Below are positions 5,472-64,000 of a stretch of DNA of 64,000 bases, piece after piece. Positions within the stretch are counted from its first letter, which is position 1. Every line of letters starts with the position of its first letter. Both the position numbers and the translations under genes were made by a program. The notes beneath the pieces are model-generated. The model saw only the letters and a program-made list of their open reading frames with translations. It made no database searches and was not told the origin of the DNA. The stretch is from positions 155,356-219,355 of the IMG/VR virus record IMGVR_UViG_3300008110_010000; one strand, written 5' to 3'.

Positions 5472-5479
5472 GATAAATA
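5472..5479 (+). promoter_or_regulatory. Putative late promoter GATAAATA
   Basis: One mismatch from T4 late TATAAATA, 15 nt before the gp5-like ATG. Confidence 0.55.
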
Positions 5480-5494
5480 GAAAAAACCCTTTTT

Positions 5495-6280
5495 ATGTCT
5501 GTACAGAATATTCAAGAATCAAATATTGAAAGAGCCCAGCATTTCTTGGGTGTTGTTGTGGATAACAAAGATCCGGAATTTAGGGCAAGATGTAAAGTTA
5601 AGGTTTTTGGAGTATTTGACGATGTTGCAGATACGGATCTACCATGGGCGTTCCAAAGATTTGATATTTCATTTGGTGACAATGGTGGATCTGGAAGGGT
5701 TAGTATACCTAAATTAGGTGCAGTTGTCCATGTCCAATTCAATAACGGGAACTACTATGCCCCCGAATACAAAGCAGTACAAGAATTATCTTCCGATTTA
5801 ATAGAAGAAATAAAAGCATCTTATGAAGGTGCTCATTCTCTAATCTATGACGGAATAGAACAGCTAAAAATATATTACACTGTTGCTAAAGGACTCGTAA
5901 TAGATTTAAAAGAGTCAACTGTGGTAATTTCTAATGATAATTCAATAACAATAACACATGCTGGCCAAACATCTACCCTTGAATTTAGAGGTGGTAAAAT
6001 TACAGAGTATGCAAATTCTGAAATAGAAAGCACTGCAGTAACTAGAATTAAACAAAGCAGCAACGAAGTTTGGGCAGACGGTAAAACAACAAAGCTTGGT
6101 CATTCCCCTGTTTATTCTGCAGTTTTAGCGGAACCTTTATGGATGTTTTTAAAACAACTCGCAGCAGCGGTAGATGCTAAAGTTCCTTCCTGTCCTGGGT
6201 GTATGGCTACCCTTGCAGAAAGCTACGAACAGCTCTCTACGTCCGATGTGGTTAAGTTAACTAAGAGTAATGAGCAATAA
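5495..6280 (+). CDS. Baseplate central spike, gp5/VgrG-type OB-fold protein without a lysozyme domain
   Basis: LGVVVDNKDPEFRARCKVKVFG...LPWA...IPKLGAVVHVQF is the gp5 N-terminal OB-fold signature, followed by a short beta-rich region. Confidence 0.85.
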   Translation: MSVQNIQESNIERAQHFLGVVVDNKDPEFRARCKVKVFGVFDDVADTDLPWAFQRFDISFGDNGGSGRVSIPKLGAVVHVQFNNGNYYAPEYKAVQELSSDLIEEIKASYEGAHSLIYDGIEQLKIYYTVAKGLVIDLKESTVVISNDNSITITHAGQTSTLEFRGGKITEYANSEIESTAVTRIKQSSNEVWADGKTTKLGHSPVYSAVLAEPLWMFLKQLAAAVDAKVPSCPGCMATLAESYEQLSTSDVVKLTKSNEQ

Positions 6281-10596: not shown

Positions 10597-11721
10597 ATGG
10601 CTAAAAAAAGAACCTATACTAGAGAAGAATACTCTCCAGAGGAAAGAGCAATAATGGATGCTTTGTATGAAGGTCATTTCAATTCAAATTTCACACAAAA
10701 ATCAATTCCATTCACATCAAAAGAACTTGAAGAAAATCAAGTTTTAAGAGTAAAGATAACAAGAATCAGAGACAACAGTGCAATTGGTGAATCCGTAAAT
10801 GGACAATCAGTTTCTATCGATATTCTTAAGGAAGAAAAAGCAATTAGGAGATTAGGTTATCCCCCTATGGATATCATGGAAGGAACCGAAATTGACGTTG
10901 TTGTATTCAAAGACCGCAGCGGCATTTATAATGGATCTCTTGCTGCAGGATATGAAAACTCCCTTAAGAATGAACTTTCTAAATCTATCAAAGATGAGAA
11001 GAGCGCATACACTGTAAGAATCGAATCAACTTGTCCTGGAGGATTTATGGTTAATCTCTCAGGAATTAAGTGTTTCTTACCTGGATCACTTGCAGCTGCA
11101 AATAGAATTATTGACTTCCAATCTTTTGTAGGGAAAACCATCAATGTGATGATTGAGACTTATGATGAAAGAAGAGATATTTTTGTAGTATCTTTCAAAA
11201 AATATCTAAAACACATCATAGATCAAAAAGTAGAGGAACTTTCGATAACACAGCAATACAGTGGAACCGTTACTGGAACATCACCTGCAGGAGTTTTTGT
11301 TGAATGGGACGAATATTACACAGGGTTAATTCCGGCGGAAGAATTTGAATCTGCGGGTTTAAAAATGCATATGGAACCAGGAAGCTCAGTTTCCTTCTAT
11401 GTTTCAGATTTTAGAAATCCAAACAGAATAGTTTTAAAATTAAACCCACCAGAGGGGAAAGAAAGGGAACTTCAGGAATTAAGGGACATATCTTTATCGG
11501 AAGACAAAGAAAATAAAATATATAGAGGAACCGTCTCTAAGATCAAGAATTTTGGAGTTTTTGTAAAACTCGAAAATGGGATCCCGGGACTGGTGGAAAA
11601 GGACAATTTAGCTAAGCCACCTAAAGAGTACGAAGTCGGTTCCGAAATTCTCTGTACTGTTTTAGATGTTGAGCTACAAAGTTCTAAATTATATCTAAAA
11701 CAGAAAATTGAGAATACTTGA
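10597..11721 (+). CDS. Ribosomal protein S1-like protein (about four S1/OB repeats)
   Basis: GGFMVNLSGIKCFLPGSLA, GTVTGTSPAGVFVEW and GTVSKIKNFGVFVKLENGIPGLV are S1-domain motifs. The N-terminus YSPEERAIMDALYE resembles Bacteroidota S1. Confidence 0.85.
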   Translation: MAKKRTYTREEYSPEERAIMDALYEGHFNSNFTQKSIPFTSKELEENQVLRVKITRIRDNSAIGESVNGQSVSIDILKEEKAIRRLGYPPMDIMEGTEIDVVVFKDRSGIYNGSLAAGYENSLKNELSKSIKDEKSAYTVRIESTCPGGFMVNLSGIKCFLPGSLAAANRIIDFQSFVGKTINVMIETYDERRDIFVVSFKKYLKHIIDQKVEELSITQQYSGTVTGTSPAGVFVEWDEYYTGLIPAEEFESAGLKMHMEPGSSVSFYVSDFRNPNRIVLKLNPPEGKERELQELRDISLSEDKENKIYRGTVSKIKNFGVFVKLENGIPGLVEKDNLAKPPKEYEVGSEILCTVLDVELQSSKLYLKQKIENT

Positions 11722-13168
11722 TCAAAATTTCTTCTACGCAGCAAAAATTGGATTTGAATTTGAGTTCATGTCCAATTTTTCGCGTTCGGAGATGGTGCAA
11801 AGAATAGGCGACGAGATTGGGAAGGAAATTAAGCTTTTCAAGAGATACCACTCCAGATTTAAGCCAACAAGGGACGTTTTTAAATTAGAACCAGATTTTT
11901 CTGGCGGTACCAAGATGGTAGAGCTAATTACTGGTCCGATGGATTACTTCGAGGCAATCCCCGTTTTAATTAGAATTCTAAAATGGATAGAAGAAAACGG
12001 ATACACGAATGAAAAATGCGCACTGCAATTTGGATTAAGCTTCGATCGTCTTAAATACCCAGATCTAATAGACCTTAAAAATTTAAATGCTTTAAAATTT
12101 GTTTTAGGGTATGATGAAGAGTATGTGTGGAGCAGATTTCCTGAAAGAAGAGGATCTCTCTATGCTAAATCTATAAAAAGAATAATTCCGGCTAACAAGT
12201 TCATTAGAAAATATGACGGAACTATTGCTGATAGAAATTCTTATGTTGTATACACTGAAAAAAACATGGGAATCAACCTTACTAAATTAGAAGAGGGTTA
12301 TATCGAGGTGAGATACATGGGAGGGACTGATTACCAGAAAAAATACACTGAGATAAAAGAAATTATAGATCACACCATAACTCATACTTTTAAAACCCTT
12401 TTACAGAACGACACCTTAAATCAAAAAGAAACATCGGATCTAAGCGCTCTAATTTCCAAATTATATAAAGAAACTGAGAGCTTTATTGACCCTGAAACGT
12501 TTGTTAGAAACTATCCAGATCTTCATGTAACTGTTGATTTAAGAGAAGATTTACAGATTATTAAAACATATTTTCACGACATTAGAGACATTCTTTACAA
12601 TTTAATAGTAGAGAATGAAATTACCTCTGGATTCCTAAATTATGACACACAAATTTCAAGATATCAGCTAAAAGACGGAAAAACTACAAGAGCTAATATT
12701 ATAAAAAATTTAGATCTTGTTGAGTGTGAAATTGAAGGAAACGTAGCTAAGTGTAGAGCTTTTGGATGTAAATTCAAAAATTGTCAAATAGAGGACACTG
12801 ATTTGGTAATGAATAATGAAATTGAAGATTCTAAAATTCTAGATTGTGATCTGGGTCTGGGAAACACTGTTAATAACTCTTATATAGATGCCAAAGATAA
12901 AGAAATAAGTTGTGAAATTACTGGGGGTATAATTAGATCAGGGTACATCACATCTCTTGCTCAGGTTTCTTCCACTACAGAAATTATAACAAATGATGCG
13001 GATGGAAAAAGCAAAGGCAAAGGCAAGGGGGAAAAATTCTTAAAGAATGTAGTATTTCCTGATCGTAATATTGAAGGACAAGTTGGCCCAAGCGACGATT
13101 TCAATAACCTTAATAATACAATTCCTTCTATTTCGATAAATAGATTGTATAAAAATAATGATCAATAA
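11708..13168 (+). CDS. Amidoligase-like (COOH-NH2 ligase type 2) protein with a C-terminal beta-helix-like region
   Basis: IGFEFEF, FKLEPDFSGG, VELITGP and IEVRYMGG motifs; TTG start; C-terminal Cys/Ile/Asn short-period repeats. Confidence 0.65.
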   Translation: MRILDQNFFYAAKIGFEFEFMSNFSRSEMVQRIGDEIGKEIKLFKRYHSRFKPTRDVFKLEPDFSGGTKMVELITGPMDYFEAIPVLIRILKWIEENGYTNEKCALQFGLSFDRLKYPDLIDLKNLNALKFVLGYDEEYVWSRFPERRGSLYAKSIKRIIPANKFIRKYDGTIADRNSYVVYTEKNMGINLTKLEEGYIEVRYMGGTDYQKKYTEIKEIIDHTITHTFKTLLQNDTLNQKETSDLSALISKLYKETESFIDPETFVRNYPDLHVTVDLREDLQIIKTYFHDIRDILYNLIVENEITSGFLNYDTQISRYQLKDGKTTRANIIKNLDLVECEIEGNVAKCRAFGCKFKNCQIEDTDLVMNNEIEDSKILDCDLGLGNTVNNSYIDAKDKEISCEITGGIIRSGYITSLAQVSSTTEIITNDADGKSKGKGKGEKFLKNVVFPDRNIEGQVGPSDDFNNLNNTIPSISINRLYKNNDQ

Positions 13169-13941
13169 TGGCTAATACTACGGAAGACCAATTAGTTCAA
13201 GAAATAAAGGATGATATCTCACATTCTTGCGCTTTACCATACGCTCTGAATGACGGGGAAATTAAAAGAATCATCAAAAGGGCCAAAGCATATTTTTATG
13301 ACAACTATCAATATGCTGTAGAGGATAGAATTTTTATTTTAGGTAAAGAACTTTTTTCACATCAATCATTTAGAGCAACTAGACAGGTTCAGCTACCTGA
13401 ATGCGTGATAAGTGTTTATGATGTAAGGGAGGTTGGTGGATCTGGTATAGTTGGAACACCCGATAAAGATTTTGGAGATTCCAAGCTATTAGGATCTGAA
13501 CTTATGTTAAGTCCCTTCGTGGGAGACAACCTTGTGTATAGAACCGTTTTATACTCATTTTTTGACCTCGCAAAAGCATACCTATTAGAAACATATGCTT
13601 TCAATTATAACAAGAATACGAAGAAGCTAACCATCCTAGGACGCGATCCTAGCCGAACATCCAGCACAGGTTTAGCCCTTGGAGGTAAGGATGTGGGAAT
13701 TAAGGCATGTATTGCCATTCCCGAGGAAAATCTATATTCTGATGAGCTTTTCGTTAGATATTGCCTTGCAGAAGCAAAAATTAATATCGGGAGACTTTTA
13801 GGAACTTTTGGTTACCAATTACCTGGTGGGGTTACCATAAACGCTAGTGCTATTTCAGCACAGGGAACCACAGAAAAGACTGAGGTAATGGATATGATTA
13901 AATCGGAAAACACCCCAAGCTATTTCTTACAGTGGAATTAA
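13168..13941 (+). CDS. Neck protein, T4 gp13-like
   Basis: C-terminal LGTFGYQLPGGVTINASAISAQG...E matches the gp13 LPGGVTxNG motif. Confidence 0.8.
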   Translation: MANTTEDQLVQEIKDDISHSCALPYALNDGEIKRIIKRAKAYFYDNYQYAVEDRIFILGKELFSHQSFRATRQVQLPECVISVYDVREVGGSGIVGTPDKDFGDSKLLGSELMLSPFVGDNLVYRTVLYSFFDLAKAYLLETYAFNYNKNTKKLTILGRDPSRTSSTGLALGGKDVGIKACIAIPEENLYSDELFVRYCLAEAKINIGRLLGTFGYQLPGGVTINASAISAQGTTEKTEVMDMIKSENTPSYFLQWN

Positions 13942-13968
13942 TCCTTAAATTATCTTCTGCTTATATTT

Positions 13969-13980
13969 TATAAATATATA
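13969..13980 (+). promoter_or_regulatory. Late promoter, exact TATAAATA overlapping AATATATA
   Basis: T4 late consensus at 13969-13976, 13 nt before the gp25-like ATG. Confidence 0.65.
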
Positions 13981-13989
13981 AGGGAGATA

Positions 13990-14361
13990 ATGATAAAGAT
14001 CACTGACATATACCCTAGAAATCCTGACGATCCCTTATACGTCCCGGACAAATTAGAAACCGACGATGTTGTGGAATCCTCTATAGGAATGATAAAGCAG
14101 ATCATGTTAACTAAACCTGGTTCTGTTTTAGGAGACCCATTCTTTGGTATAGATCTAGAATCTTTAATTTTCGATTTTGAGGTCAATCAGCAAGAATTAG
14201 AAGAGGCAATCAGCTTACAGCTTTATACCTACTGTCCTTTTGCTAGAGGAATACTCAAAATTGATTTTCAGGTGGGTTTTTTCAGAGGAGAAACCAGAGA
14301 TAGCTGTGTTATTGAATTCGCTATCAAAGGTAATCCTGTATTGGGAATAAAGGTAATTTAA
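13990..14361 (+). CDS. Baseplate wedge subunit gp25-like (GPW/gp25 family)
   Basis: IKQIMLTKPGSVLGDPFFGIDLESLIFD motif and 123 aa length. Confidence 0.85.
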   Translation: MIKITDIYPRNPDDPLYVPDKLETDDVVESSIGMIKQIMLTKPGSVLGDPFFGIDLESLIFDFEVNQQELEEAISLQLYTYCPFARGILKIDFQVGFFRGETRDSCVIEFAIKGNPVLGIKVI

Positions 14362-14362
14362 A

Positions 14363-16087
14363 ATGGATTTATTCAAAAAAAATCGGGCTAAAATTCAGGA
14401 TCTTCTTCAGGATACTCTTGAGATCATCCAGAAAAGATATAATCAAGCCAATCAATTATTTACAGTAGCTTCTGCTTGGGGACAAATATTATTTGTTCTG
14501 CAGAACCTTTCTCAGCTAATCCTTTACTTTATTGAGGATTCTATTACTGAGCTTGATATTAGAAAAGCAAGTAGGGAAAGTTCAATTTATGGACTTGCTG
14601 CTCTTGCTGGACATAACGCTTCCAGAAGTACTGCTGCAAGGGGCCAGGTGGAAATTATATGGAACGGAACAGATGCAACAACTGTAGGCGGTGGAGCAAT
14701 TCTAATTCCTAGATATGCTCAAATTAAATTTTCTAACGGTGGCGTTTCTTATGTTTTAAACTTTCCCCAGGAATATACTAGGATTAATCTAAATTCTTCT
14801 TCCAAGGTTTCTTGTGAAATATTAGAGGGAAGCATTAAAACTTCGACATTCACAGGAAACGGAAGATCACTACAAAGTTACAACGTGTCTGACAGGATTA
14901 CTTCCGCCATTGACAACTTTCAAGTTAAAGTTTTTGTAGACAGTGACGAATGGAAGGTTTATGATTCTTTATATGATATTCCATTTAATGCAGAGGGTGT
15001 TTTGGTTAGAACCGGTATCAGTAGTGGTATAGACGTAATTTTTGGAAATTTAAATTTTGGAAAAATCCCTCCTACTGGATCCACAATACAGGTACAATAT
15101 CTGGAAACCCTAGGGTCTGGAGGAAATATCAGTTCTCTTGAACCTGGAAAAATAGCATTTGAATTTAGCGACGACGGAACGGATTCTTTCGGTAATTCAG
15201 TTTCCCTTCAGGAGTATTTAAAAATAAACTGCACCGTTGCACCTCAGTTAGGAACCGATAAAGAATCCATAGAACTTACAAGAATTCTTGCTCCTAAAAC
15301 CTCAAGATCTTTTGTTTTAGCAAATCCCGATAATTATATTACATACTTTGAAAAATTTGGTATATTCTCAATTATTGAGGCTTTTTCAACCTTTGATGAT
15401 CAATATCTGGATGATGATAATATTATTTATGTTCTTTTAGTACCTGATATAACTCAGAAATTAAAAACTAATGAAACGTATTTTGATATTGCAGAGACAG
15501 AATTCAAGCTGACAGAATTCCAAAAAAATAGACTTCTTCAAGCAATCGAAGATAGCGGACAGAAAATTGTTACTACTGAAGTAAGAATATTAGATCCTAA
15601 AATTTCTAGGTATGTTTTAAATATACTCATAACTGTTTTTGAAGGTTATGATCCTGATACTATAAAAGGACAAATCATTGATTCTATTAGCAATTACTTT
15701 ATAGGTATTAGAAGAAGAGACAAAATCCCTAGATCTGATTTAATTTCAATTGTAGAATCTGTTCCGGGGGTAGATTCAGTTACTTTATTTTTTATATCTG
15801 AAAAAAATGAACTGTATGCTAAAAGTGTAGAATCTCTTCCTGATACAGATCCTAAAAAGAAAACGGTTTTAGGTTTAGATGATTTTGGAGATATTCTTTT
15901 TGATAAGGATGAAATAGTAATACTTACTGGCGGATGGTCAGACAGAGCTGGTTTATTTTATGATAAAGGAGCGGATTTAAACAAGTTATCTTCAATCAAT
16001 ATAGATATTAGAAAAACAGTTCCTGTTACCTACAACACAGAGGTAAATATGAAGAACAAGCAATTCATAAGAAATAGTAATTCATAA
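14363..16087 (+). CDS. Baseplate wedge protein gp6 / baseplate-J-like
   Basis: Follows gp25. Contains A...G.NASRSTAA, IFGNLNFGKIPPTGSTIQVQYLET.G..GN and a RSFVLANPDNY segment typical of gp6. Confidence 0.8.
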   Translation: MDLFKKNRAKIQDLLQDTLEIIQKRYNQANQLFTVASAWGQILFVLQNLSQLILYFIEDSITELDIRKASRESSIYGLAALAGHNASRSTAARGQVEIIWNGTDATTVGGGAILIPRYAQIKFSNGGVSYVLNFPQEYTRINLNSSSKVSCEILEGSIKTSTFTGNGRSLQSYNVSDRITSAIDNFQVKVFVDSDEWKVYDSLYDIPFNAEGVLVRTGISSGIDVIFGNLNFGKIPPTGSTIQVQYLETLGSGGNISSLEPGKIAFEFSDDGTDSFGNSVSLQEYLKINCTVAPQLGTDKESIELTRILAPKTSRSFVLANPDNYITYFEKFGIFSIIEAFSTFDDQYLDDDNIIYVLLVPDITQKLKTNETYFDIAETEFKLTEFQKNRLLQAIEDSGQKIVTTEVRILDPKISRYVLNILITVFEGYDPDTIKGQIIDSISNYFIGIRRRDKIPRSDLISIVESVPGVDSVTLFFISEKNELYAKSVESLPDTDPKKKTVLGLDDFGDILFDKDEIVILTGGWSDRAGLFYDKGADLNKLSSINIDIRKTVPVTYNTEVNMKNKQFIRNSNS

Positions 16088-16088
16088 A

Positions 16089-16343
16089 ATGTTTAATACT
16101 GAAAGAAAAAGTTATTATGACTACATAAATTCAACAAGAGATAATAGATCAAATGTTGGATTCAACTACGAGGGGCAGATATTTGAAAAAACCCTGTCCT
16201 CTATAACACTTGAAGGCGACAAAAACAGGAAAAGTATAATGTCGTATATCGAGAGGGTAGTTTATAGATTAATCGAGGCAACTAAGGGAATTAGAAATTT
16301 TGTTAACTACAGAGTTCCTAAAAATAATAAGTACGTTAGGTAA
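16089..16343 (+). CDS. Hypothetical protein (84 aa)
   Basis: Fills the operon gap; its stop overlaps the next start (TAATG). Confidence 0.6.
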   Translation: MFNTERKSYYDYINSTRDNRSNVGFNYEGQIFEKTLSSITLEGDKNRKSIMSYIERVVYRLIEATKGIRNFVNYRVPKNNKYVR

Positions 16344-19300
16344 TGAATTATAAAAATCTTCTATTTTTTAATAAAACTGGGCACCAATCAAATTTTGTTT
16401 GGAACGGAGAATTCTGGGAAACTAGATTAATGCTTCCTCAGGTATCTGTGGATCTTTTTGAAATAGAACACCTGTTTATAATTGAAAAATTTGAAGATCT
16501 AAACGGAAACACTGTTTATGGATATCCTCATATAACCCCAGAAATAAGTTCAACCTCTGCATCTGGAATATATGGATCTTTTAATTCTGGATCTAGAAAG
16601 GTTACATTAAACTCTGAACCTGTTGTGGATTTTATAGGATCTAAGGTTTTTTGTCAGCAGTTCCCTAACGGAAATCTTGTAACTGGTGTTAGTGTGGTGG
16701 ATAAGACAATTGAGCTTGAAAATGCTGCAACGTTTTCAGAAAATTCCGTCCCTTTGTTTTTTAATTTATGGAGAGTTAGTTTCGAGACAACTAGAAACGT
16801 TTTAGATTTTGATGCTTTTGATCCTATTAGAGCGAGTATAACTAAGGGATTAGATTATATCACGACTTCCTCTGATGTAAGTGCTATTTCGGAGAATGAC
16901 GAATTTTTAATGATTTTAGGAGACGGAATTCCTAAAGATGCTAGAATTACAAAAGTTTCTGGAAATAAAATATACTTAAACAAGAAGTGCGAAGTTACTC
17001 TTAATAACATCACGGTTTTTGTATATCCTGTCGAGGAAAGAAATAACATTTCTTCTTACATATATCAATACATCCTCACCGAAGATGGAACTCTGGATGC
17101 TCCTGTTTTAGAATCAATCAATACTAATTATTTAAAAATCGATTATGATCCAAATGAAACTGTAAATGATTACTTAAGAAGCTCGGGTGAAATATATTCG
17201 GGAAGTGCCTCTGTTAACATAGCTCTTAATTCTAAAGAGGAGGGAATATTCGGTAGAACATTAGTAATAGAGGATCTTTCATTAGGGTACCCAAAAACTG
17301 TAGCAAGGATAGAGATACACGGGGAAACAATAGGTGAAGATGAAAGATATAAAACAATTTTAAATAATTTTGGGAGAAGGTTAAATGCGGAAGACGCTTA
17401 TATATTAAGAGATTCTGATCCCAAAGAGCCATTCACAGATTATGAGATTTTAAATGATAAGAGAAAAGAGCTTTTATTAGAAGGACATGAAATATACTCT
17501 TATTTAGGATCTTATAAGGGTCTTGTTAATGCTATTAAATTTTTTGGGTACCAAGATCTAAGAATTAAAGAATATTGGTTAAATATTAAAAAATCTGAAT
17601 CTGAAACATCCGCTCTCAAACAAAATACGGATTTTTTAGAGAGGTGGAATGCTTTACCCGGAGGTCAACAAAATTTAATATCCAGTATAATTGACGATGA
17701 AAATTCTGGTAAGTATAAACAGGTAGAAATTTACGGAAAAAGAAACGACGGAACTTTTGGTTTAAAATCCTCGATGGAAAAATTATTTCCATCCTCAAGT
17801 TTTAAGAAAACTGCACTCTTTGGTTTATTCTATGATATCAACAGGGTAGTTGAGAACCAAGAGGACATTTATGAATATCCCGTTGTGGAAAATGCTTTTG
17901 TTTTTTCTCCGGAGGAGGTACTTATAAAACTGTTTGGCTTAAAAGAAAAATTAAAAAAAGATTATCTTCCTTTAAATGCGAGGATTATTGATATAACAGG
18001 AGAAGGTGTCTATTTTGGAATCTACAAAACCAGAGCATGGACAGATAATTTAAAGATAGATGAGTTAAATCAGGGAATTGACCTAGAGCTAGGATTTACC
18101 CCAGAATATGGTTACATAGAGGATTTAAGGCCCTTTTCAGTAAGACCCAATTCTGATATTCCGTATGTTCCTTATGTTGGGGTGGAACCTAACACCTACG
18201 ATTTTTCAACTTATGGAAATCTAGTAGATTTACCCCAGAACAATTTAAAACTCCCAGGTAAACAGTCCAAAGCTTTAGCTGATGCAATAAAGCTATTTTA
18301 TGATGAAAGAAACACGAAGGGAATAAAACCTTACAGACTAGGTGACGGAGATAATAAAAACGGGGGATACCGAAAACTATATGACGGGAAAGTTTATGAT
18401 GTCCCCGCAGGATTTCCGGTTACGATGGAAATAACATCTTTTGTTTTAACATGGGACGAAGTAAATAATCAGTGGGATTCTTTAGATAGAAATATTTCAA
18501 CATATTCTTCAACACTAGCATCTATTTCAGATGTTTCCGGATATAACGATCAGACCCTAATAGACTCTAGCTTAAATTTTGAATTTAATCTTTCTACCAT
18601 ATTTGGAACCTTGTTCAATATTAATCTCCAAACTGGTATATCAATTTTAAACCCAGCATCTGGTAAGGTTCAACTTAAATTTACTTCTAACACAGATTCC
18701 GATTGTCAGTTTCTATGTGAGGTTCAAAGCTATAGTACTCTCACTGGAATAGCTAATGTTAAACTTTTATGGGTTAAAAATGAAGGAATATTCGATGACT
18801 GGAAAGTAGAAATCGTTAACATTTTTAAAGACAATCTCGATTTATCCTATTATGATTATTCTTTCAATCCCGACGGATTTTATTCTTGGGATAATCTTAG
18901 ATTCGCGGGATTTTATGAGGTTGAATGGAAGATCACAAAGAAAGATGATAGACCTTATTATTATGATCTAAGAGGTAAAATAACTGATTATTATAAACTT
19001 CCCCTTGTTCTTCCATATGATGGAATATATTCGGTTCAATGCAGGGTTTGGGATGGATTTAACGACATCTGTTCTACACACTATGAGAATTGCTTGGAAG
19101 TTAAGAAGAGGGAAGTTGAAATTGTTAGTGTTTCTAGATTCAGAGAAGCTGAAGTTTATACCTGGGATCAGACAAAACAGCCTTGGGATAATTTTGAATC
19201 GATGTGGGTTTTTCCCGTTGAAAGAAGACCAGAAGAACCTAAACCATCTAATTTAATCCTAAATCCTGCTGAATATGGAAATCAATTTAACGAGGGTCAA

Positions 19301-22300
19301 AAATGCAAGATTTTAAAAGATTTTCCAGAAACTATAGGATCTTCTTTAGTTAGATTCGGTCTACAAAAAATACCTATGTCTAGCTTTACCAGTTCTTATA
19401 GTGGAACAGGTTCTGGTCCAGTGATTGCAACTTTAAATTCATCATATCTTCCACATTCTTTTATAAACGGGGAGAGAGTAACATTAATAGATGGATACAA
19501 CACTGGGGCAGGAAATCTTTCCGGGACTTATCTAATAAGTAACGTTACAGCTACAGGTTTCACCCTTCCGATTATACTCTCAGGTTCAGTAACACCTTCC
19601 CTTATAAGTGTGGTTAAATCCGGGAGCATTACTGTAAAGTACGAGGGATCTAATTATCATACTGTTGATTTTAATGGAAGATTGGATACTACACTGGGCA
19701 ATTTGATGAGTAAATTCAATGGGTTCACGAAAGATCCTGCTTTCGGGATTGATACTATAACTACTTCTCTTATTTCCACAGCTAACGTTCAAGAATGGAT
19801 GGATGTTGTTTTTAAAACACCGATAGGGAGGGGAGCATTATACAATGGTAAATCCCTCGAGTTTACTACGACCGGTGGCCTTTATCTATACGATGGAAGT
19901 TCTGCAGTTAAATCATATTCTTCACAATTCTCTGGAGGAATTAATGCTTACTCTGATTATGTTGATTATAATTTTGAAGGAGATCTTCCAACGGAAAATA
20001 CCAGATACTATGGAACCAAGGGATTAAACTGGGACTCTTTTGATTCTCTTTCTTGGAATAATTTATATTCTCAAACCTGGGGAATGTATGATTTTCATAA
20101 TGACTGGTTAGGTGGATTTTCCCTTTATAATCTACAAAGTGGAGATAAAATAAGGGTTAGTCAAAAGTCTAAAGGAATAATTCTAGGGAATGTTTCTTCC
20201 CCTGATGCAAGTCCAAATTATCTAGATTTAAGGGAAGCTGCTGATCAATTAAATGCGTCAACAGATCCGAATATTTCTAGATTCTATTATGAAGTTAGGG
20301 GATTTTCAAAATTGCCGGAATATTTTAAGAACACTGGGGATGTTATTTCCCCGGGTCTTACGTGTATAGCTAGGCCTTACAAAGAGGAAACCTTATCATA
20401 TGATTTACAAGTTGGATCGCCTGCAATGGGTGCTCCTTTATCTATAAAGCAAGATAGAGACGGTGATATAATCATGGGAGGAGTTACCTCTGTCAAGGTA
20501 ATGAAATCCCCAACAGATATAGATTATTATTATATAGGTACTGAATATCCCGGGTCTGTTCCAAGAAAAGTTTTACCTGATGAATATGGAAATTGGTGGT
20601 GTTATGGAGAAAGATGTGCTGTACCTCTAGTTATTTATAATAGACAAAAACCAGAGGAGACAATACTAGTTAGTTCTGTTCTCGTATCCGGATTCTCCAG
20701 ACCAGATCTCAATTATTTAGCTCCTGTCCCTGATTCTCAATTTCAAACAATATGCTTAGCCGTAGATGATAGGACTGAAAACTTTGTGATGTATGTTAAG
20801 TACATACAATCATATTCTGTTGGATCTCCAGAAGATTCCTATAGATTAATAGAGTTTAATGCTTCTTCTAAAGAATTCGTTGTTATTTCAACTCTAGGTC
20901 CTTCATGGAATGCTAGTAGAACATATAATGTTGGAAGTATTGTTAGTAAGAATGGATTATCATATAGATCCCTAGTTGGTAGTAATCTTTCTCAAAATCC
21001 GGAATCATCCACAGGATATTGGGAATTAATTCCTCAAGAAAATATTGGAATTATTGATACTACTCTGTATAGTATCAGACAGTTAAAGTATGAATATATT
21101 GGAAAGAAATCTAAACTTTGGATTGTTACTAATGGTGGATTAAAAACATACAACGGGATTAAAATTGATACACTGGATATCAGTAACAGTGGTCTCCATA
21201 CTAACGATCTTTATTCATTGGAAATAGATGAATCTGGAAGTAAGTGGATAGGAAGTTCTAATGGAATATGTTATTATGATAATATAAGATGGGGATGTTG
21301 GACGCCAACTACCAATCCAGAATTACCAGTCGGTAAAAGTAGAAACATAGTAAATCTTGGAAGTGGAAGGATATTCTTTATAGTACAAACAGGAACAGAA
21401 ATCTATGAATTAGTTTATTTTAACGGAATAACTTTTGTAGTTTATTCAGATGATCCTGGAACCATAAACACATTTGGACCTATCTACAGTTTAGATTATG
21501 ATTATGAAGATATTTATTTCTTTAAAAATAATGTAAAGTATATTGACGGGAATTTTACTAGGAACGTAGGTGATTTATTTTATTTGGGGGATGAACCAAG
21601 AATAGGATCTCCTTATGTTAATGCTAATTATTGGGATCAATCCAGCGTTGGGTCTTATCCAACACCGCAAAACATCCACGCGAGAAAAATTTCTTTTGTT
21701 ATTCCCTATATTCATGCATCGGCAAAAACCCCTGGAATTTCTGGATGGGATTTTATTTATCATTTATCATATAGACCAGTTCCAGATCCTATTTATGTAA
21801 GAGAAAAAGGTATCGGAGAAACAGAAGTAAATTTCAACTTTATTGTTGGTCCTTTATACACTTCTTCAATAAATATCGGTAAAGATCCCCAACTTCCTTA
21901 CGTTGATAGCAAATCGTGGAAAATCCCTAGCTGGATTAATTATGATTTTAGAGATGTAACAGATTCACATCCTGGAATTGATATTGACAATCTTTTCCTC
22001 GATGCACCGCTTAGAGATATTGCTTCTGGTGTTGCATTAAAGGAGTCATATTGGAGAAACAGCAATGTTATTAGAAGCTCCGATAGGGAGATTGGAAATC
22101 TTCTTGATAGATTTGAATGGGTTATTAAAATAGGAGATACCCAGGATGATAGAGGGATAAAAACATTTGTGGATGAAGAAGGGTATGTTTATGTTACTGG
22201 ATTTTTCTCAGGAACTATAAGTTTTGGATCTAAGAATAACCTACCAATAGGTGCAAATACAACTCTTGCTTCTAATAGCTGTAGATCAATATTTGTTGCT

Positions 22301-41391: not shown

Positions 41392-41450
41392 TGGGGGATA
41401 TAAAAATCTCCGGAAGGCGTGATGTGATATTATCACTCTGTAATAAACTT

Positions 41451-41458
41451 GATATATA
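41451..41458 (+). promoter_or_regulatory. Late promoter GATATATA
   Basis: 7 nt before ATG 41466. Confidence 0.5.
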
Positions 41459-41465
41459 AGAGGAT

Positions 41466-43781
41466 ATGTCAAGTTTTAACTATACTAGCAAATTTTTTAG
41501 TCTATCTCCATATTTACTTATGGAGTATAGATATGGTGTTCAGCCAAATCCCGAATACCATCAGGTTATTTTTGGGCCCTCTGTAGTTGGCTTTGAAAAA
41601 ATGGTAAACGGATATTTTAATAATGCCGTACAGATAACAAACAGAAACGAGGACACACAAACAACTGGTAATGTTAGGGACAGAAGTTCTGTACAAATAT
41701 CACAAAACACGTTTGTTAAGCTTGACATTGATCGATTAGTACAGTATTTAGACTATGATGATAAATTAACGGATCCTGCGAATCTTCCAGTTACGTTTGA
41801 TACCAATTTAAATGTTTATTACGATACTATCAGATACCACTTTTTAAGTGGATTTGATTTCGGTTTAAGTGATGGAGTAATCATGCAAGTCCAGTTCCAG
41901 GAAAGAAATGGTAAAAAGTGCACAGTATCGCAGGTAACTTATGAAACTGGAGATTTAGACATAACAACACCCAATCCGAATCCCATATACTTTAATGCAG
42001 GAATTTATGATAATTATGTAGAGGTTAAAATACCTTCTTATTCAAGTATAACATATGAGTATGACACTCAAGCTGGATCTGGATTAGAAAGTGGAACAGT
42101 AGCAGCAAAGATCAGCTCAGACGGTAAGGGATTTATTAGAAATCAGCCTTTCACCGTTAGTCTTTATGAAATAGAGAATACGCAAGAATTAAATGGCTTC
42201 TATTATTTCTATACAGCTTTAAATAGTATTGCAACAGTTACTCCTTTTGATGAATACGGTGATTTAGCTGCTAATGTTGTTGAAGATAACGACTTTGATT
42301 ATTTTAAATATTATCCAACTTGGAAAGAAAACTTCATTGAGGATTTTATTTATACCGAAAGTTCTCTAGGTAATATTTATTACATCATACATGATTTAGA
42401 AGTAAAAGAGCAGGTAGGACAAAGACAAATATCAACACAAAAATTACAGCTTCTTCAGGATAAAGATTTTAATTCACCTTATATCTATAGGCCTGTAATT
42501 GTAAATCCTAAAGCAACCAGCTTTAGTATTATTTACACTATGAGATTGGTGAACAAGTTCAGTAATGTTTCTATCATGAGGATAGCATCGGTTACAAGCA
42601 CTGAAGTTGATAAGTATGGACCTTCAATAAAGAAAATAAATCTTTTACATCAGCCTTATCCTCAAAAAGTTTATAACAAAGTAACAGAGCCTGTTGTATC
42701 TAAAGCATATACATTAAATGTAAATCCAATTGAAAGGGTAATTACGAAATATGTTCCTGCTTTCTTTGAAAGAGAATCTGTAAACATTTCTCAAGAGGAT
42801 TTGACAATTGATAATTTAGGAGGATTAACACAATCAACAACTACTGATGCAACTATTGCATATGGACAGGGAAAATCCAAAATAGTTGTTAACCCTTATG
42901 ATAATTATTATAAGTTTAGAATATTCATCAAAAATGAAGGAAAAGAAAATACTGTTTTAGATCTTGGATCTAATTCTGATTTTTATCTTGTTTTTGAAGG
43001 AGGCGATAATAAAACTGTTAAAATATCAAGTATGACTGACAGTACTTTCCAAAATCCAAGCAAGGGAGAATTAGTTTTTAAACTTGTAGAATCTGAATCT
43101 AAAAAAATATCTGCATTTAGTTCACGCGATTTTCATATAGTTTCTAAAACAAACAATGGAATAGAAACATCTGTTTATCACGGAACTTGGATATTACCTT
43201 CTGAGAGAGATCAAAAACCAGTTGCAACCACAACCGCTACTCCTGCACCTGCACCTGCAGTTGTTGAAATAGCTCCTTCCGTTATAACGCAAGAACCGGT
43301 AGTCGATATAATTCCTCAACAGCCTAAAGATTACTTTGATATAGAAAAAGATCAGGTTGTTTTAAATGTTGAGCCCGTAGTTAAACCAATATTAACAGTC
43401 GAAGAACCCGTTATTAAACCTAAACAACCAATCAGATATAACATCGACACTCTATCCAATTTAATCAGTATGGACGAAACAGCGGGTAAGAGTGTTCAGG
43501 AAATTGCTGATTATTATACAATACCAGGAAGACCTGGGAATGATCTGTTTGAGGGAATGAATAATAAATTCTTCTTAAATGCAGTCAGATTAGTTCATCC
43601 AGATTCTAATGGAATCAGAAGCTCAATGTTTAACCAATACTCTTCTTATCTTGGAGAAATTTACGAGCCTTATGAATCTGTTAGATATCCAGTTGGCGGG
43701 GGAGGAGGAAGTAGATTTATTGATTATGATCAGATGGGTTTAAAACCTAGTAATGATATGGGACAACAGTTCTATTTATAA
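41466..43781 (+). CDS. Unknown protein (771 aa), probably structural
   Basis: Late motif upstream, precedes the gp3-like gene, and has an internal T/P/A linker. Confidence 0.55.
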   Translation: MSSFNYTSKFFSLSPYLLMEYRYGVQPNPEYHQVIFGPSVVGFEKMVNGYFNNAVQITNRNEDTQTTGNVRDRSSVQISQNTFVKLDIDRLVQYLDYDDKLTDPANLPVTFDTNLNVYYDTIRYHFLSGFDFGLSDGVIMQVQFQERNGKKCTVSQVTYETGDLDITTPNPNPIYFNAGIYDNYVEVKIPSYSSITYEYDTQAGSGLESGTVAAKISSDGKGFIRNQPFTVSLYEIENTQELNGFYYFYTALNSIATVTPFDEYGDLAANVVEDNDFDYFKYYPTWKENFIEDFIYTESSLGNIYYIIHDLEVKEQVGQRQISTQKLQLLQDKDFNSPYIYRPVIVNPKATSFSIIYTMRLVNKFSNVSIMRIASVTSTEVDKYGPSIKKINLLHQPYPQKVYNKVTEPVVSKAYTLNVNPIERVITKYVPAFFERESVNISQEDLTIDNLGGLTQSTTTDATIAYGQGKSKIVVNPYDNYYKFRIFIKNEGKENTVLDLGSNSDFYLVFEGGDNKTVKISSMTDSTFQNPSKGELVFKLVESESKKISAFSSRDFHIVSKTNNGIETSVYHGTWILPSERDQKPVATTTATPAPAPAVVEIAPSVITQEPVVDIIPQQPKDYFDIEKDQVVLNVEPVVKPILTVEEPVIKPKQPIRYNIDTLSNLISMDETAGKSVQEIADYYTIPGRPGNDLFEGMNNKFFLNAVRLVHPDSNGIRSSMFNQYSSYLGEIYEPYESVRYPVGGGGGSRFIDYDQMGLKPSNDMGQQFYL

Positions 43782-52662: not shown

Positions 52663-52704
52663 ACTCATCGCATTATTTTTTTCCTACCGTTTGTTTTATA
52701 TTTG

Positions 52705-52712
52705 GATATATA
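52705..52712 (+). promoter_or_regulatory. Late promoter GATATATA, preceded by TATATTTG
   Basis: 12 nt before ATG 52725. Confidence 0.6.
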
Positions 52713-52724
52713 AAATAAAAATTA

Positions 52725-53570
52725 ATGGGAAAGCTCTCAAATTTTGAAAACAGTCAAAAATCTCCTCTTTTAGAAAACTCTGATAAAAGCAAAGCTGCTT
52801 TTGATAAAATAGTGGATTGTAAAATTAGACTTATTGCAGGATCTAATACTTTCTTTGGAAAGTTTTCTTTAAGCCTTGAATTTATTGAGGATCTTAATCT
52901 TCAATACAAAACTATGGCCACCGATGGTATGAAAATATACTATGACCCAGATTTTGTATTAAAACACAGCGAGGAAGAAATTAGATGGGTAATCTGTCAT
53001 GAAATCATGCATTGTGCTCTTTTTCATTTCATTAGAAGGCAAGCAAATCCCACAGCGTGGAACGCAGCTGCCGATTATGCCCTAAATCAATTAATAGACC
53101 CGGAATCTTACACAATTCCCCCAGGGGATCCACAGAGCCCTGAAGTAAGAAAAGCTAAAATATTTTTAGGTGCTTTGGGAAAAATGATACCAGGATGCTT
53201 AAATACTAGACCAGCTACCCCGGACAATCCTTACGGAAAACCAGAGTATAAGGGTTGGTCTGCAGAGCAAATTTATGACCATATAATAGAAAACAACGTT
53301 CAGCTTCCTCCAGAAGAAGGATGGAATTACGGAGGCGTTACACCCCCAGAATTTACTGGTTCTTCTAAGAAAAAATCTGCAGGGGCAACAGGTCCTTCTG
53401 GTCCTATCGCTAAAATTGGCGATTTCGTAAAAATAAAAAGCGGAGGGTTTGGTCGAATAACATCAATAGATGCAAATACTGGGGAAGCAATGGTTGACCC
53501 ATACTCTGAGGCTGATGCTATAGCACAGATAGAAAAACAATCCGGAAGAAAGGTTATATCAATAAAATAA
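52725..53570 (+). CDS. Zinc metallopeptidase domain protein (DUF2201 N-terminal-like) with a C-terminal KOW/SH3-like motif
   Basis: TMATDGMKIYYDPDFV, VICHEIMHCALFH and WNAAADYALN match this family; KIGDFVKIKSGGFGRITSID is KOW-like. Confidence 0.8.
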   Translation: MGKLSNFENSQKSPLLENSDKSKAAFDKIVDCKIRLIAGSNTFFGKFSLSLEFIEDLNLQYKTMATDGMKIYYDPDFVLKHSEEEIRWVICHEIMHCALFHFIRRQANPTAWNAAADYALNQLIDPESYTIPPGDPQSPEVRKAKIFLGALGKMIPGCLNTRPATPDNPYGKPEYKGWSAEQIYDHIIENNVQLPPEEGWNYGGVTPPEFTGSSKKKSAGATGPSGPIAKIGDFVKIKSGGFGRITSIDANTGEAMVDPYSEADAIAQIEKQSGRKVISIK

Positions 53571-63117: not shown

Positions 63118-64000
63118 TTGGCACAAAAAACCAGACCGGAACTTAAGATACGTTTCCAAACCGGGGACATCCCAACACAGCAGGATTTTGAAGATTTAAT
63201 TGATAGTCAGTTCAATCTGATAGAAGATGCCCTAGTTACCGGACCTACCGGAGCTACTGGACCTCAAGGTCCTCAGGGTTACACTGGTGCAACCGGTGCA
63301 ACAGGAGAAACCGGAACATCAGGAACATCAGGTGTTAATGGTACTTCTGGGACTTCAGGAGCTAACGGAGCTGCTGGAGCTACTGGTGCAACTGGGGCAA
63401 CTGGTGCCGCTGGTGCCGCTGGATTAAATGGTGCCGCTGGGCCAACTGGTGCTACTGGTGCTACTGGTTTAAATGGAGCTATCGGTGCTACCGGGGAAGC
63501 TGGTACTTCAGGTACTTCTGGTGCAGCTGGTGCAGCTGGTGCTACAGGTAATCCTGGGTCTTCTGGAACCTCTGGGGTTTCAGGAACCTCCGGTGAATCT
63601 GGTGCTGCTGGTTCTTCTGGTACTTCTGGCGTTGGTATACCCTCAGGGGGAAATATAGGTCAGGTTTTAGCTAAAGCAAGCTCTACTAGTTATGATGTAG
63701 CCTGGGTAGATCAAACTGGAGGTGGCGGAGGAGGTTCTAATGGAACATCCGGTACATCTGGTAACTCTGGATCTTCTGGTACTTCCGGTAACTCTGGATC
63801 TTCTGGTACATCTGGAACTGATGGACAATCTGGTTCTTCTGGTACATCTGGAACTGACGGACAATCTGGTTCTTCTGGTACATCTGGTGAGTCTGGAGCA
63901 TCTGGTTCTTCTGGTACTTCTGGAACTGACGGACAATCTGGTTCTTCTGGTACATCTGGAACTGACGGACAATCTGGTTCTTCTGGTACTTCCGGTAACT
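63118..64000 (+). CDS. Collagen-like (Gly-X-Y) fibre protein, 3'-truncated, absent from the supplied ORF track
   Basis: The TTG start gives MAQKTRPELKIRFQTGDIPTQQDFEDLIDS, then about 44 GXY triplets (63241-63636), a PSGGNIGQVLAK...W knob, and more GXY to the window end. Confidence 0.85.
   Translation, partial: MAQKTRPELKIRFQTGDIPTQQDFEDLIDSQFNLIEDALVTGPTGATGPQGPQGYTGATGATGETGTSGTSGVNGTSGTSGANGAAGATGATGATGAAGAAGLNGAAGPTGATGATGLNGAIGATGEAGTSGTSGAAGAAGATGNPGSSGTSGVSGTSGESGAAGSSGTSGVGIPSGGNIGQVLAKASSTSYDVAWVDQTGGGGGGSNGTSGTSGNSGSSGTSGNSGSSGTSGTDGQSGSSGTSGTDGQSGSSGTSGESGASGSSGTSGTDGQSGSSGTSGTDGQSGSSGTSGN
63802..63981 (+). repeat. 36-bp tandem repeat x5 (four near-identical SGTSGTDGQSGS copies and one variant)
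   Basis: Unit tctggtacatctggaactgacggacaatctggttct. Confidence 0.9.

What the first reader, a model, noticed from the sequence alone, without database searches (positions are those of the whole stretch)
13949..13992. Hairpin that buries the gp25 ribosome-binding site, with the late promoter inside it
Seen: ATTATCTTC (13949-57) pairs with GGAGATAAT (13983-91, one G-U pair). After a 2-nt bulge, CTTATAT (13960-66) pairs with ATATAAG (13976-82). The stem covers GGGAG and the AU of the start codon, and TATAAATA lies in the loop. Known: T4 genes e, soc, 49 and I-TevI are silenced on long read-through mRNA by such hairpins and translated only from late transcripts that lack the 5' arm. Inference: the same timing switch controls gp25, the sheath-initiating wedge protein.
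Basis: partly seen in the sequence, partly recalled or inferred. Interest (0 to 1): 0.62.

Follow-up and report, generated by a model that had tools for sequence, protein, structure and literature searches.

The report
Start-masking hairpin around a phage promoter
The hairpin in front of this uncultured jumbo phage's gp25-like baseplate gene is real and conserved in close relatives. It probably hides the start codon on long read-through mRNAs, as in phage T4, but the promoter inside it is the phage's own ATATATA box, the GGGAG is probably not a ribosome-binding site, and nothing supports an early/late timing role.

Summary
The sequence facts are correct. The arms 13949-13958 and 13982-13991 pair (43 nt, -12.2 kcal/mol, z -4.8) and cover GGGAG plus the A and U of the ATG at 13990.

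The window is the last 64 kb of a 219-kb uncultured jumbo phage. It encodes a region-2-only, gp55-like sigma factor, and its genes lack Shine-Dalgarno sequences.

T4's TATAAATA (13969-76) is not enriched in this genome and is not conserved in relatives. The conserved element is R-ATATATA-R at 13973-81. That box has 73 copies, 47 of them in the 4.3% of the genome that is intergenic, has no -35 element, and precedes the gp25-like gene in all ~50 distinct relatives. By the T4 spacing rule, transcripts would start near 13985/6, so they lack the 5' arm and are nearly leaderless. The predicted cost of opening the start region falls from about 13.5 to 1.3 kcal/mol.

In 14 close relatives the arms are 86-95% conserved, against about 54% at third codon positions and about 40% in the loops. 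No compensatory changes were found. More distant relatives lack the hairpin.

Four other genes in this genome show the same design. Upstream promoters are of the same class, so control of dosage or translational coupling is likelier than a timing switch. No RNA data could be obtained.

Verdict: a plausible new member of a known kind.

The parts
13135..13143 (+). Variant promoter-like box GATAAATAG, 24 nt upstream of the ATG of the 257-aa gene. It is the likely source of read-through transcripts that cross the hairpin.
   Evidence: the R-ATA-W-ATA-R scan also finds such boxes just upstream of the starts at 5495 and 58933; for the ORF.
13168..13941 (+). Upstream 257-aa ORF. Its stop codon (13939-41) lies 7 nt before the 5' arm.
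   Evidence: weak phrog_211 match; stop codon conserved in relatives.
13949..13958 (+). 5' arm of the outer stem (ATTATCTTCT).
   Evidence: Pairwise identity is 0.945 among 14 near relatives, against 0.53-0.55 at third codon positions and 0.60 in the adjacent spacer. The word is not a recurrent intergenic element.
13962..13978 (+). A-U-only inner stem (13962-68 with 13972-78) and its 3-nt apical loop. Its 3' strand is the first half of the promoter box.
   Evidence: Internal-loop positions 13959-61 (identity 0.39) and apical position 13970 (0.40) vary freely.
13969..13976 (+). It is judged coincidental.
   Evidence: 7 copies in the window against 9.9 expected. 25 copies genome-wide without the enrichment seen for ATATATA. 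Position 13970 is not conserved.
13973..13981 (+). The phage's own -10-type promoter-like box, AATATATAA (consensus R-ATATATA-R).
   Evidence: ATATATA occurs 73 times in the genome, 47 of them intergenic (4.3% of the genome); control A/T words have 0-4 intergenic copies. The box is oriented toward genes and lies 4-29 nt before start codons. There is no -35 information, and A occurs 6 nt after the box in 33 of 42 sites. It is invariant before the gp25-like gene in ~50 distinct relatives.
13982..13991 (+). 3' arm (GGGAGATAAT), covering the SD-like GGGAG and the A and U of the start codon.
   Evidence: Identity is 0.857 in near relatives. The only changes turn U-G pairs into U-A or C-G.
13985..13986 (+). 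Inferred transcription start of the promoter-proximal mRNA, giving a 4-5 nt leader. Not mapped.
   Evidence: Inference from the T4 rule that the box spans -13 to -6 (PMC2988020), the A enrichment at that position, and the sharp minimum box-to-ATG spacing that places the A of the ATG exactly there.
13990..14361 (+). gp25-like sheath-initiator/baseplate gene (123 aa).
   Evidence: AF2 model with pLDDT 79.5. Top Foldseek PDB hits are T4 gp25 5iw9 (E 7.8e-4, TM 0.54) and other gp25/TssE-like baseplate proteins. There is no Pfam or PHROG hit.
14363..16087 (+). gp6-like baseplate wedge gene, directly downstream.
   Evidence: phrog_219, E 2e-29. tblastn relatives are found in Lak megaphages, other huge phages and jumbo phages of Tenacibaculum, Flavobacterium and Chryseobacterium.
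41447..41474 (+). Analogous hairpin at the 771-aa gene. The 5' arm includes the box (41452-59) and the 3' arm covers the ATG at 41466 and the next two codons.
   Evidence: -13.6, z -2.6. (opening cost 13.2 kcal/mol on the long transcript, 0.4 on the short one). Stems are conserved and the loop varies in 4 relatives.
52680..52732 (+). Analogous hairpin at an HNH endonuclease gene (ATG 52725), with the box at 52706-13 inside it.
   Evidence: -13.5, z -3.3; phrog_1314, HNH endonuclease; 10.2 against 3.6 kcal/mol; relatives keep pairing of upstream sequence with the box region.

Best explanation
The hairpin is a cis-acting mRNA structure, and it forms only on transcripts that begin upstream of 13949. 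Those would start at same-class boxes such as 13135, and no terminator intervenes. On such read-through mRNAs the outer stem locks the 8 nt before the start codon, together with the A and U of the AUG, against a conserved intergenic segment. In a translation system without Shine-Dalgarno sites, initiation depends on an open, A-rich start region, so this pairing should strongly reduce internal initiation of the gp25-like gene.

The phage's own -10-only promoter box (R-ATATATA-R, 13973-81) lies inside the hairpin. It is probably read by host RNA polymerase carrying the phage's region-2-only, gp55-like sigma. Transcripts from it should start near 13985/6. They would lack the 5' arm and the inner stem, carry a 4-5 nt leader, and have an open start codon.

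The result would be that translation of the gp25-like protein depends on its own promoter rather than on the 14-kb upstream baseplate operon. That is control of dosage or uncoupling, not of timing.

Shown: the structure, its conservation pattern, the box and its statistics, and the sigma gene. Inferred: the transcription start, read-through, the effect on translation, and the biological purpose.
For: - Structure. The sense RNA is favoured over the antisense RNA and over DNA.
- Predicted cost of opening -8..+13: 13.3-14.0 kcal/mol on read-through RNA against 1.3 from a start at 13985-88.
- Footprint in 14 near relatives: 5' arm 0.945, box 0.986, 3' arm 0.857; spacer 0.60, internal loop 0.39, third codon positions 0.53-0.55.
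- All four substitutions within pairs keep or improve pairing.
- Box statistics and logo.
- The box is retained before this gene in all relatives.
- gp55-like, region-2-only sigma. A multisubunit phage RNA polymerase was not found. The T7-type search was uninformative, because its control found nothing anywhere.
- SD depletion and A-rich leaders. The role of start-region structure in SD-less Flavobacterium: PMC6847099.
- No terminators above chance upstream.
- The same architecture occurs at four other genes. One has arms that differ between relatives while staying complementary, and one has conserved stems with a variable loop.
- T4 precedent for genes e, soc, 49 and I-TevI: PMC3014915.
Against:
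- There are no compensatory double substitutions in this hairpin. Support is conservation only, within a shallow clade.
- Relatives at 84% protein identity or less, and all more distant ones, keep the box but lack the hairpin. The mask is therefore dispensable for expressing this gene.
- Upstream transcripts come from the same promoter class, so the benefit of masking is unclear.
- As a class, genes with a box are not more masked than other genes (Mann-Whitney p 0.22).
- A 4-5 nt leader may itself translate poorly, and the host's ability to use such mRNAs is unknown.
- The G-rich segment just downstream of the box differs from the A/T-rich segment at other sites and may weaken this promoter.
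Confidence: 0.45

Rival explanations
1. Translational coupling device. The hairpin keeps the gp25-like start closed on polycistronic mRNA, except when a ribosome finishing the upstream 257-aa ORF melts the outer stem. That ORF's stop codon lies 7 nt before the 5' arm. Synthesis of the two proteins would then be tied together, and the internal promoter would add a second, uncoupled supply.
For: The stop codon at 13939-41 lies 7 nt before the arm, and the spacer is similarly short (about 7-11 nt) but variable in sequence in relatives. Forcing the bases covered by a terminating ribosome (to 13952-54) to be unpaired lowers the opening cost of the start region from 13.7 to 5.9-7.8 kcal/mol.
Against: The predicted opening is only partial. 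A 48-nt gap is long for re-initiation. The hairpin is absent from most relatives, which have the same gene order.
Confidence: 0.15
2. RNA end or processing element. The hairpin stabilises the 3' end of the upstream operon's mRNA, is a nuclease (for example RNase III) site, or weakly terminates transcription. Masking of the start codon would be a side effect.
For: The hairpin sits in the only sizeable gap (48 nt) of a tightly packed operon. Elsewhere in the genome, boxes often follow a hairpin that ends the preceding unit (for example upstream of 56248 and 57422).
Against: It has no U-tract and an A-U-rich stem, unlike the phage's clear G+C-rich, U-tailed terminators. Its 3' arm reaches into the next gene's start codon, which an end-protecting hairpin has no need to do.
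Confidence: 0.1
3. DNA-level element. The two conserved blocks are recognised as DNA, for example by a gene-specific regulator binding around -37..-28 and at the start site, or they aid promoter melting. The RNA hairpin would be incidental.
For: Under the inferred transcription start, the 5' arm lies exactly at -37..-28 relative to the box. Both blocks are conserved without covariation.
Against: Other box sites carry no information at -35. The arm word does not recur in intergenic DNA. The arms are complementary through G-U pairs that favour sense RNA (-12.2) over DNA (-5.5) or antisense RNA (-6.6). A 25-bp spacing between half-sites is atypical for a dimeric binding site.
Confidence: 0.1
4. 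No function. The box is palindromic and sits in A/T-rich DNA, which yields the inner stem automatically, and the outer stem is a lineage-specific accident.
For: The inner stem is A-U only and overlaps a self-complementary box. About 2.7% of random genome windows fold as well. The hairpin is confined to a shallow clade and shows no covariation.
Against: The 5' arm is conserved at 0.945 while flanking intergenic positions and third codon positions are at 0.4-0.6. A G-rich tract is exceptional in leaders that are 12% G. The four substitutions within pairs all preserve pairing.
Confidence: 0.12
5. A T4-consensus late promoter TATAAATA in the loop and a buried Shine-Dalgarno site make an early-off, late-on timing switch.
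For: The exact word is present. A gp55 homologue is present. There is T4 precedent (PMC3014915).
Against: The word is at chance frequency and is not conserved. SD motifs are depleted genome-wide. The upstream transcription units carry the same late-type box. The only other promoter-like class is far upstream.
Confidence: 0.05

Closest known systems
T4 start-masking hairpins of genes e (lysozyme), soc, 49 and I-TevI (PMC3014915)
   Same: A helix sequesters the translation start on long upstream-initiated transcripts. A gp55-type, -10-only promoter lies within or next to the 5' strand region, so promoter-proximal transcripts lack the 5' arm. In this genome one of the sister cases is also a homing-type (HNH) endonuclease.
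   Different: - There is no functional Shine-Dalgarno site to hide, because the genome lacks SD sites.
- The box is R-ATATATA-R, not TATAAATA.
- The inferred start lies inside the 3' arm, giving a nearly leaderless mRNA.
- The read-through transcripts come from the same promoter class, so timing is not the evident purpose.
- Nothing has been tested experimentally.
T4 gene 25 'split' translation initiation region (Nivinskas/Malys, as reviewed in PMC3014915)
   Same: It concerns the homologous gene, with a conserved hairpin at its translation start that is restricted to close relatives.
   Different: In T4 the hairpin lies between the SD and the AUG, brings them from 27 to 11 nt apart, and enhances translation. 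Here the hairpin lies upstream, includes the AUG and should inhibit translation.
T4 late promoters read by gp55 (PMC2988020)
   Same: An 8-bp A/T box about one helical turn upstream of the start, no -35 element, a variable first base, and a region-2-only sigma encoded by the phage.
   Different: The consensus differs at two positions (R for T at -13, T for A at -9, with GATAAATAG variants). The sigma is shorter (118 aa, matching profile positions 25-129 of 181). gp33 and gp45 partners were not examined.
Translational coupling through a masked downstream start (as in RNA phage MS2, from general knowledge)
   Same: A start site is closed by pairing with sequence near the end of the upstream cistron and can be opened by a terminating ribosome.
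   Different: Only partial opening is predicted, and an internal promoter offers an independent route.

Membership tests
T4-type start-masking hairpin bypassed by an internal late promoter | A stable helix that includes the SD and/or the start codon | tested here: met
   The outer stem 13949-58/13982-91 includes the A and U of the AUG and the 8 nt before it. MFE -12.2, z -4.8. The opening cost on long RNA is 13.3-14 kcal/mol.
T4-type start-masking hairpin bypassed by an internal late promoter | A promoter downstream of the 5' arm, so that its transcripts cannot form the helix | tested here: inconclusive
   A strongly enriched, conserved -10-type box lies at 13973-81. Promoter activity and the transcription start were not measured.
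T4-type start-masking hairpin bypassed by an internal late promoter | Longer transcripts of an earlier temporal class run through the hairpin | tested here: not met
   Upstream units carry boxes of the same class (13135, 5472, genome 154689). The other promoter-like class is more than 45 kb upstream of the hairpin. This is in silico only. Read-through itself is plausible, since no terminator is found.
T4-type start-masking hairpin bypassed by an internal late promoter | Translation is low from long transcripts and high from short ones | not testable with these tools
T4 late promoter (TATAAATA box read by gp55) | A consensus TATAAATA box that is used genome-wide and conserved | tested here: not met
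   7 copies in the window against 9.9 expected. 25 copies in the genome, 8 of them intergenic. The second base varies in relatives.
T4 late promoter (TATAAATA box read by gp55) | A gp55-type sigma encoded by the phage, and a -10-only architecture | tested here: met
   ORF at genome 109220-109576: T4 gp55 E 3.6e-6, phrog_234 E 6e-17, Sigma70 region 2 only. There is no -35 information at 42 box sites.
gp25 / GPW / TssE sheath-initiator family | gp25-like fold | tested here: met
   AF2 model with pLDDT 79.5. Top PDB matches are T4 gp25 5iw9 (probability 1.00, TM 0.54) and baseplate proteins of other contractile systems.
gp25 / GPW / TssE sheath-initiator family | Match to the family's sequence profile | tested here: not met
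   No hit to a gp25-type family in Pfam even at E 10 (the only match was an unrelated PilM_2 at E 0.043) and no PHROG hit. The sequence is too diverged.
gp25 / GPW / TssE sheath-initiator family | Adjacent to a gp6/J-like wedge gene | tested here: met
   The gene at 14363-16087 matches phrog_219, E 2e-29.
Shine-Dalgarno ribosome-binding site | Purine-rich anti-SD complement used upstream of the genome's genes at a suitable spacing | tested here: not met
   GGAG lies within 20 nt upstream of 5 of about 225 genes (2.2%) against 8.1% in coding background. Leaders are 49% A and 12% G. Here only 3 nt separate GGGAG from the ATG.
Intrinsic terminator | G+C-rich stem followed by a U-tract | tested here: not met
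   Two G-C pairs, no U-tract, and not reported by the scan.
Described RNA families (Rfam) | Match at the gathering score | tested here: not met
   Only two sub-threshold chance matches.

The most novel reading that the evidence does not exclude
A family of uncultured freshwater jumbo phages, probably of Bacteroidota, runs late expression from a variant gp55-type TATA box (R-ATATATA-R). The box is placed so close to start codons that many late mRNAs are leaderless or carry leaders of 2-5 nt. In this SD-less setting a subset of genes has evolved hairpins that wrap the promoter, so that only promoter-proximal transcripts are translated. That subset comprises the gp25-like gene, a tail fibre gene, an HNH endonuclease gene and two others. 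This would be a general 'promoter-licensed translation' strategy rather than T4's early/late safeguard.
Probability: 0.3. Interest if true: 0.55.

Novelty: new member of a known kind. Interest (0 to 1): 0.35.

Why it matters
If confirmed, the T4 device of hiding a start codon from read-through mRNA and exposing it on promoter-proximal mRNA would extend to a distant, uncultured jumbo-phage lineage. That lineage's hosts appear not to use Shine-Dalgarno sites, so mRNA structure may be the main control on initiation.

The by-products are of practical use for annotating these phages. They are a well-supported late-type promoter consensus, an inferred fixed start position that gives leaderless or near-leaderless mRNAs, and a pairing of two promoter-like classes with two phage sigma factors. 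The hairpin itself is an ordinary regulatory feature.

Tried and rejected
- Megablast of 13000-16000 against phage records found no match.
- Pfam and PHROG scans of the 123-aa protein gave nothing useful. Its identity came from the predicted fold.
- Covariation on the gp25 hairpin found 0 compensatory pairs.
- RNAalifold on the sister hairpin recovered only 7 pairs, because bulges misalign. The arm comparison was made by eye.
- Genes with a box are not more masked, as a class, than other genes (p 0.22). Masking is confined to a handful of genes.
- The box is absent upstream of the homologous gene in Lak-A1 and Tenacibaculum phage pT24. In LR756501 a box-like sequence (AATATATATAG) lies about 40 nt upstream, in front of a short ORF, and was not interpreted. 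The consensus is therefore not shown to be general to all related huge phages.
- A first pattern for the second upstream motif was too strict and was redone.
- No Rfam family matched, and the terminator reading was rejected.
- The T7-type RNA polymerase search was uninformative, because its control found nothing anywhere.

Full report
**Context**

The window is the last 64 kb of a single 219,355-bp viral contig with 35% G+C. Almost all window genes lie on the + strand.

Around the finding lies a baseplate module:
- a gp27/gp5-type hub OB-domain protein (5495-6280);
- a 1434-aa protein;
- a protein with S1 RNA-binding domains (10597-11721);
- two further ORFs;
- the 123-aa ORF at 13990-14361;
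- a gp6-like wedge protein at 14363-16087 (phrog_219, E 2e-29).

The wedge protein's relatives are in Lak megaphages of Prevotella, other huge metagenomic phages, and jumbo phages of Tenacibaculum, Flavobacterium and Chryseobacterium. A Bacteroidota host is therefore likely but is inferred.

The 123-aa protein has no Pfam or PHROG hit. Its AlphaFold model (pLDDT 79.5) matches T4 gp25 best (5iw9, probability 1.00, TM 0.54), followed by gp25/TssE-like proteins of other contractile systems. 'gp25-like' is therefore justified.

**The observation**

- The 43-nt element folds at -12.2 kcal/mol (z -4.8, 0 of 200 shuffles as good). The 71-nt context folds at -14.8 (z -3.0).
- The minimum-energy fold has a 10-bp outer stem (13949-58 with 13982-91, three G-U pairs), 3x3 internal loops and a 7-bp A-U inner stem (13962-68 with 13972-78).
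- The outer stem is common to both folds. It covers GGGAG and the A and U of the AUG.
- About 2.7% of random 50-nt genome windows fold as well. Among 224 start-codon windows, which are less structured than average, this one ranks 7th.
- The sense RNA is far more stable than the antisense RNA (-6.6) or DNA (-5.5).

**The promoter is not TATAAATA**

TATAAATA occurs 7 times in the window against 9.9 expected and 25 times in the genome.

Listing all upstream regions exposed a different recurrent element, ATATATA preceded by G or A.
- It occurs 73 times in the genome. 47 of those are in the 4.3% that is intergenic, while comparable A/T words have 0-4 intergenic copies.
- 42 copies point at a start codon 4-29 nt downstream.
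- The logo shows G (26) or A (13) before the heptamer and no information at -35.
- A occurs in 33 of 42 sites at the position 6 nt after the heptamer.
- The smallest box-to-ATG spacing, found four times and never undercut, puts the A of the ATG exactly at that position.

T4 late promoters are an 8-bp box spanning -13 to -6, with a variable first base and no -35 element (PMC2988020). Aligned to that, the enriched A is +1, and the tightest spacing gives leaderless mRNAs.

Variants GATAAATAG sit just upstream of the starts at 5495, 13168 and 58933.

The genome encodes a 118-aa, gp55-like sigma with region 2 only. That fits a -10-only box. It also encodes a separate 207-aa ECF-type sigma with regions 2 and 4. 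No multisubunit phage RNA polymerase was found. The contig is estimated to be 79% complete.

That the box is a promoter, and that the gp55-like sigma reads it, are inferences.

**The box in the hairpin**

The gp25-like gene has AATATATAA at 13973-81, 8 nt before the ATG.

I compared 24 viral and 54 metagenomic loci holding homologues at 53-100% protein identity. About 50 of them have distinct upstream sequences. All keep R-ATATATA-R 5-9 nt before the ATG. The TATAAATA reading is lost in many (TCTAAATA, TTCAAATA).

The inferred start is 13985/6, inside GGGAG.

**GGGAG is probably not a ribosome-binding site**

GGAG lies within 20 nt upstream of only 2.2% of genes, against 8.1% of coding windows. 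Leaders are 49% A and 12% G. This is the pattern described for Bacteroidota, where start-region structure and upstream adenines tune initiation (PMC6847099).

The G-rich tract is thus an oddity, and pairing with the 5' arm explains it better than an RBS role does.

**Conservation**

Among 14 distinct close relatives, pairwise identities are as follows:

| Region | Pairwise identity |
|---|---|
| Third codon positions | 0.53-0.55 |
| Spacer after the stop codon | 0.60 |
| Internal loop | 0.39 |
| 5' arm | 0.945 |
| Promoter box | 0.986 |
| 3' arm | 0.857 |

Each variant still folds (-9.4 to -13.4 kcal/mol). The exception is one intermediate sequence at -3.9. In four variants the stem ends just before the AUG.

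Formal counting gives 97% of cells paired, four one-sided changes (U-G to U-A or C-G) and no compensatory double changes.

Relatives at 84% identity or less keep the box but have neither the G-rich tract nor the arm. The hairpin is therefore a constrained but lineage-specific addition.

**Predicted effect**

Opening -8..+13 costs 13.3-14.0 kcal/mol on read-through RNA and 1.3 kcal/mol on RNA starting at 13985-88.

No terminators above chance lie upstream. The nearest upstream boxes are at 13135 and 5472 and at genome 154689, so read-through RNA is expected and belongs to the same promoter class.

A second promoter-like motif, with a CGGGG core, occurs five times. All copies lie more than 45 kb upstream of the hairpin. 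An early/late switch is therefore unsupported.

A ribosome terminating at 13939-41 would lower the opening cost to 5.9-7.8 kcal/mol. Translational coupling is a live rival.

**Sister cases**

Of 42 box-plus-start regions, five combine a strong fold with a start that is masked only on long RNA:
- genome 125457 (19.2 against 3.1 kcal/mol);
- window 41466 (13.2 against 0.4);
- this gene (13.7 against 1.3);
- a tail-fibre gene at genome 118382;
- an HNH endonuclease gene at window 52725.

At genome 125457 the arms differ among eight relatives while staying complementary. By eye, the arm segment just outside the shared GGATAT/ATATCC core reads CCTAGG, TTAG, CCGG or TTCTGG with matching partners. 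RNAalifold recovered only part of this.

At window 41466 the stems are invariant and the loop varies.

As a class, genes with a box are not more masked than others (p 0.22). As in T4, this is a device of a few genes.

**Comparison with the known**

T4 genes e, soc, 49 and I-TevI use inhibitory start-region helices that late-promoter transcripts escape (PMC3014915). This case works like them in architecture. It differs in the box sequence, the absence of an SD, the near-leaderless product and the lack of an evident timing role.

T4's own gene 25 has a different, enhancing hairpin between the SD and the AUG (same review).

No Rfam family matches.

**Limits**

Nothing here measures RNA or protein.

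**Verdict**

- This is most likely a new member of a known kind.
- Confidence in the masking model is about 0.45.

Noticed in passing
window 37162, 41451, 49310, 52705, 54501, 56227, 57397, 58479, 63088 (+) and 61065 (-); variants at 5472, 13135, 58912: A phage-wide promoter-like box, R-ATATATA-R (variant GATAAATAG). It is oriented toward genes, often follows a G+C-rich U-tailed terminator (for example before 56248 and 57422), and precedes both structural and non-structural genes. The minimum spacing gives leaderless mRNAs.
   Followed up: yes
G000:C1 1516, 37494, 75558, 114009, 123839 (outside the window): A second conserved upstream motif: a T-run, then CGGGG, then a TAAATTT-like element 21-37 nt before start codons. 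There are five intergenic copies, all on the + strand. It is possibly a bipartite early or middle promoter. A 207-aa ECF-type sigma with regions 2 and 4 (G000:C1:98495-99118) could be its reader.
   Followed up: partly
window 10597-11721: A 374-aa protein with S1 RNA-binding domains (PF00575, E 6e-20) is encoded inside the baseplate operon. This is unusual placement, and it could bear on translating structured or leaderless mRNAs in an SD-less host.
   Followed up: no
window 52680-53570: An HNH endonuclease gene (phrog_1314) has its start codon masked by a hairpin that encloses its own promoter box. This parallels T4 I-TevI.
   Followed up: partly
G000:C1:125420-125465 and loci L093-L099: A hairpin enclosing the box upstream of a conserved GTG/TTG-start gene (phrog_36119). 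Its arms differ between relatives while staying complementary.
   Followed up: partly
G000:C1:94648-94700: A box followed at once by a terminator-like hairpin with a U-tract, before a small TTG-start ORF. It looks like an attenuator, or a short RNA made from this promoter.
   Followed up: no
window 16343-23872 and 31362-37160: Very large ORFs (2509 and 1932 aa) lie downstream of the wedge genes. They were not characterised.
   Followed up: no
Lak phage records, e.g. MK250016.1 279206-281472: In Lak megaphages the gp25-like gene lies downstream of the gp6-like gene, the reverse of the order here. No ATATATA box precedes it.
   Followed up: partly
G000:C1 about 43900, 58900, 65850-66130, 73950: tRNA-like sequences are visible in intergenic DNA. 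Some crude ORF calls there are spurious. They were not checked with ARAGORN.
   Followed up: no
window about 63400-63470: A run of GGT/GCC/GCT triplets (collagen-like Gly-X-Y coding repeats) near the contig end, similar to the collagen-like tail-fibre gene at genome 118382.
   Followed up: no
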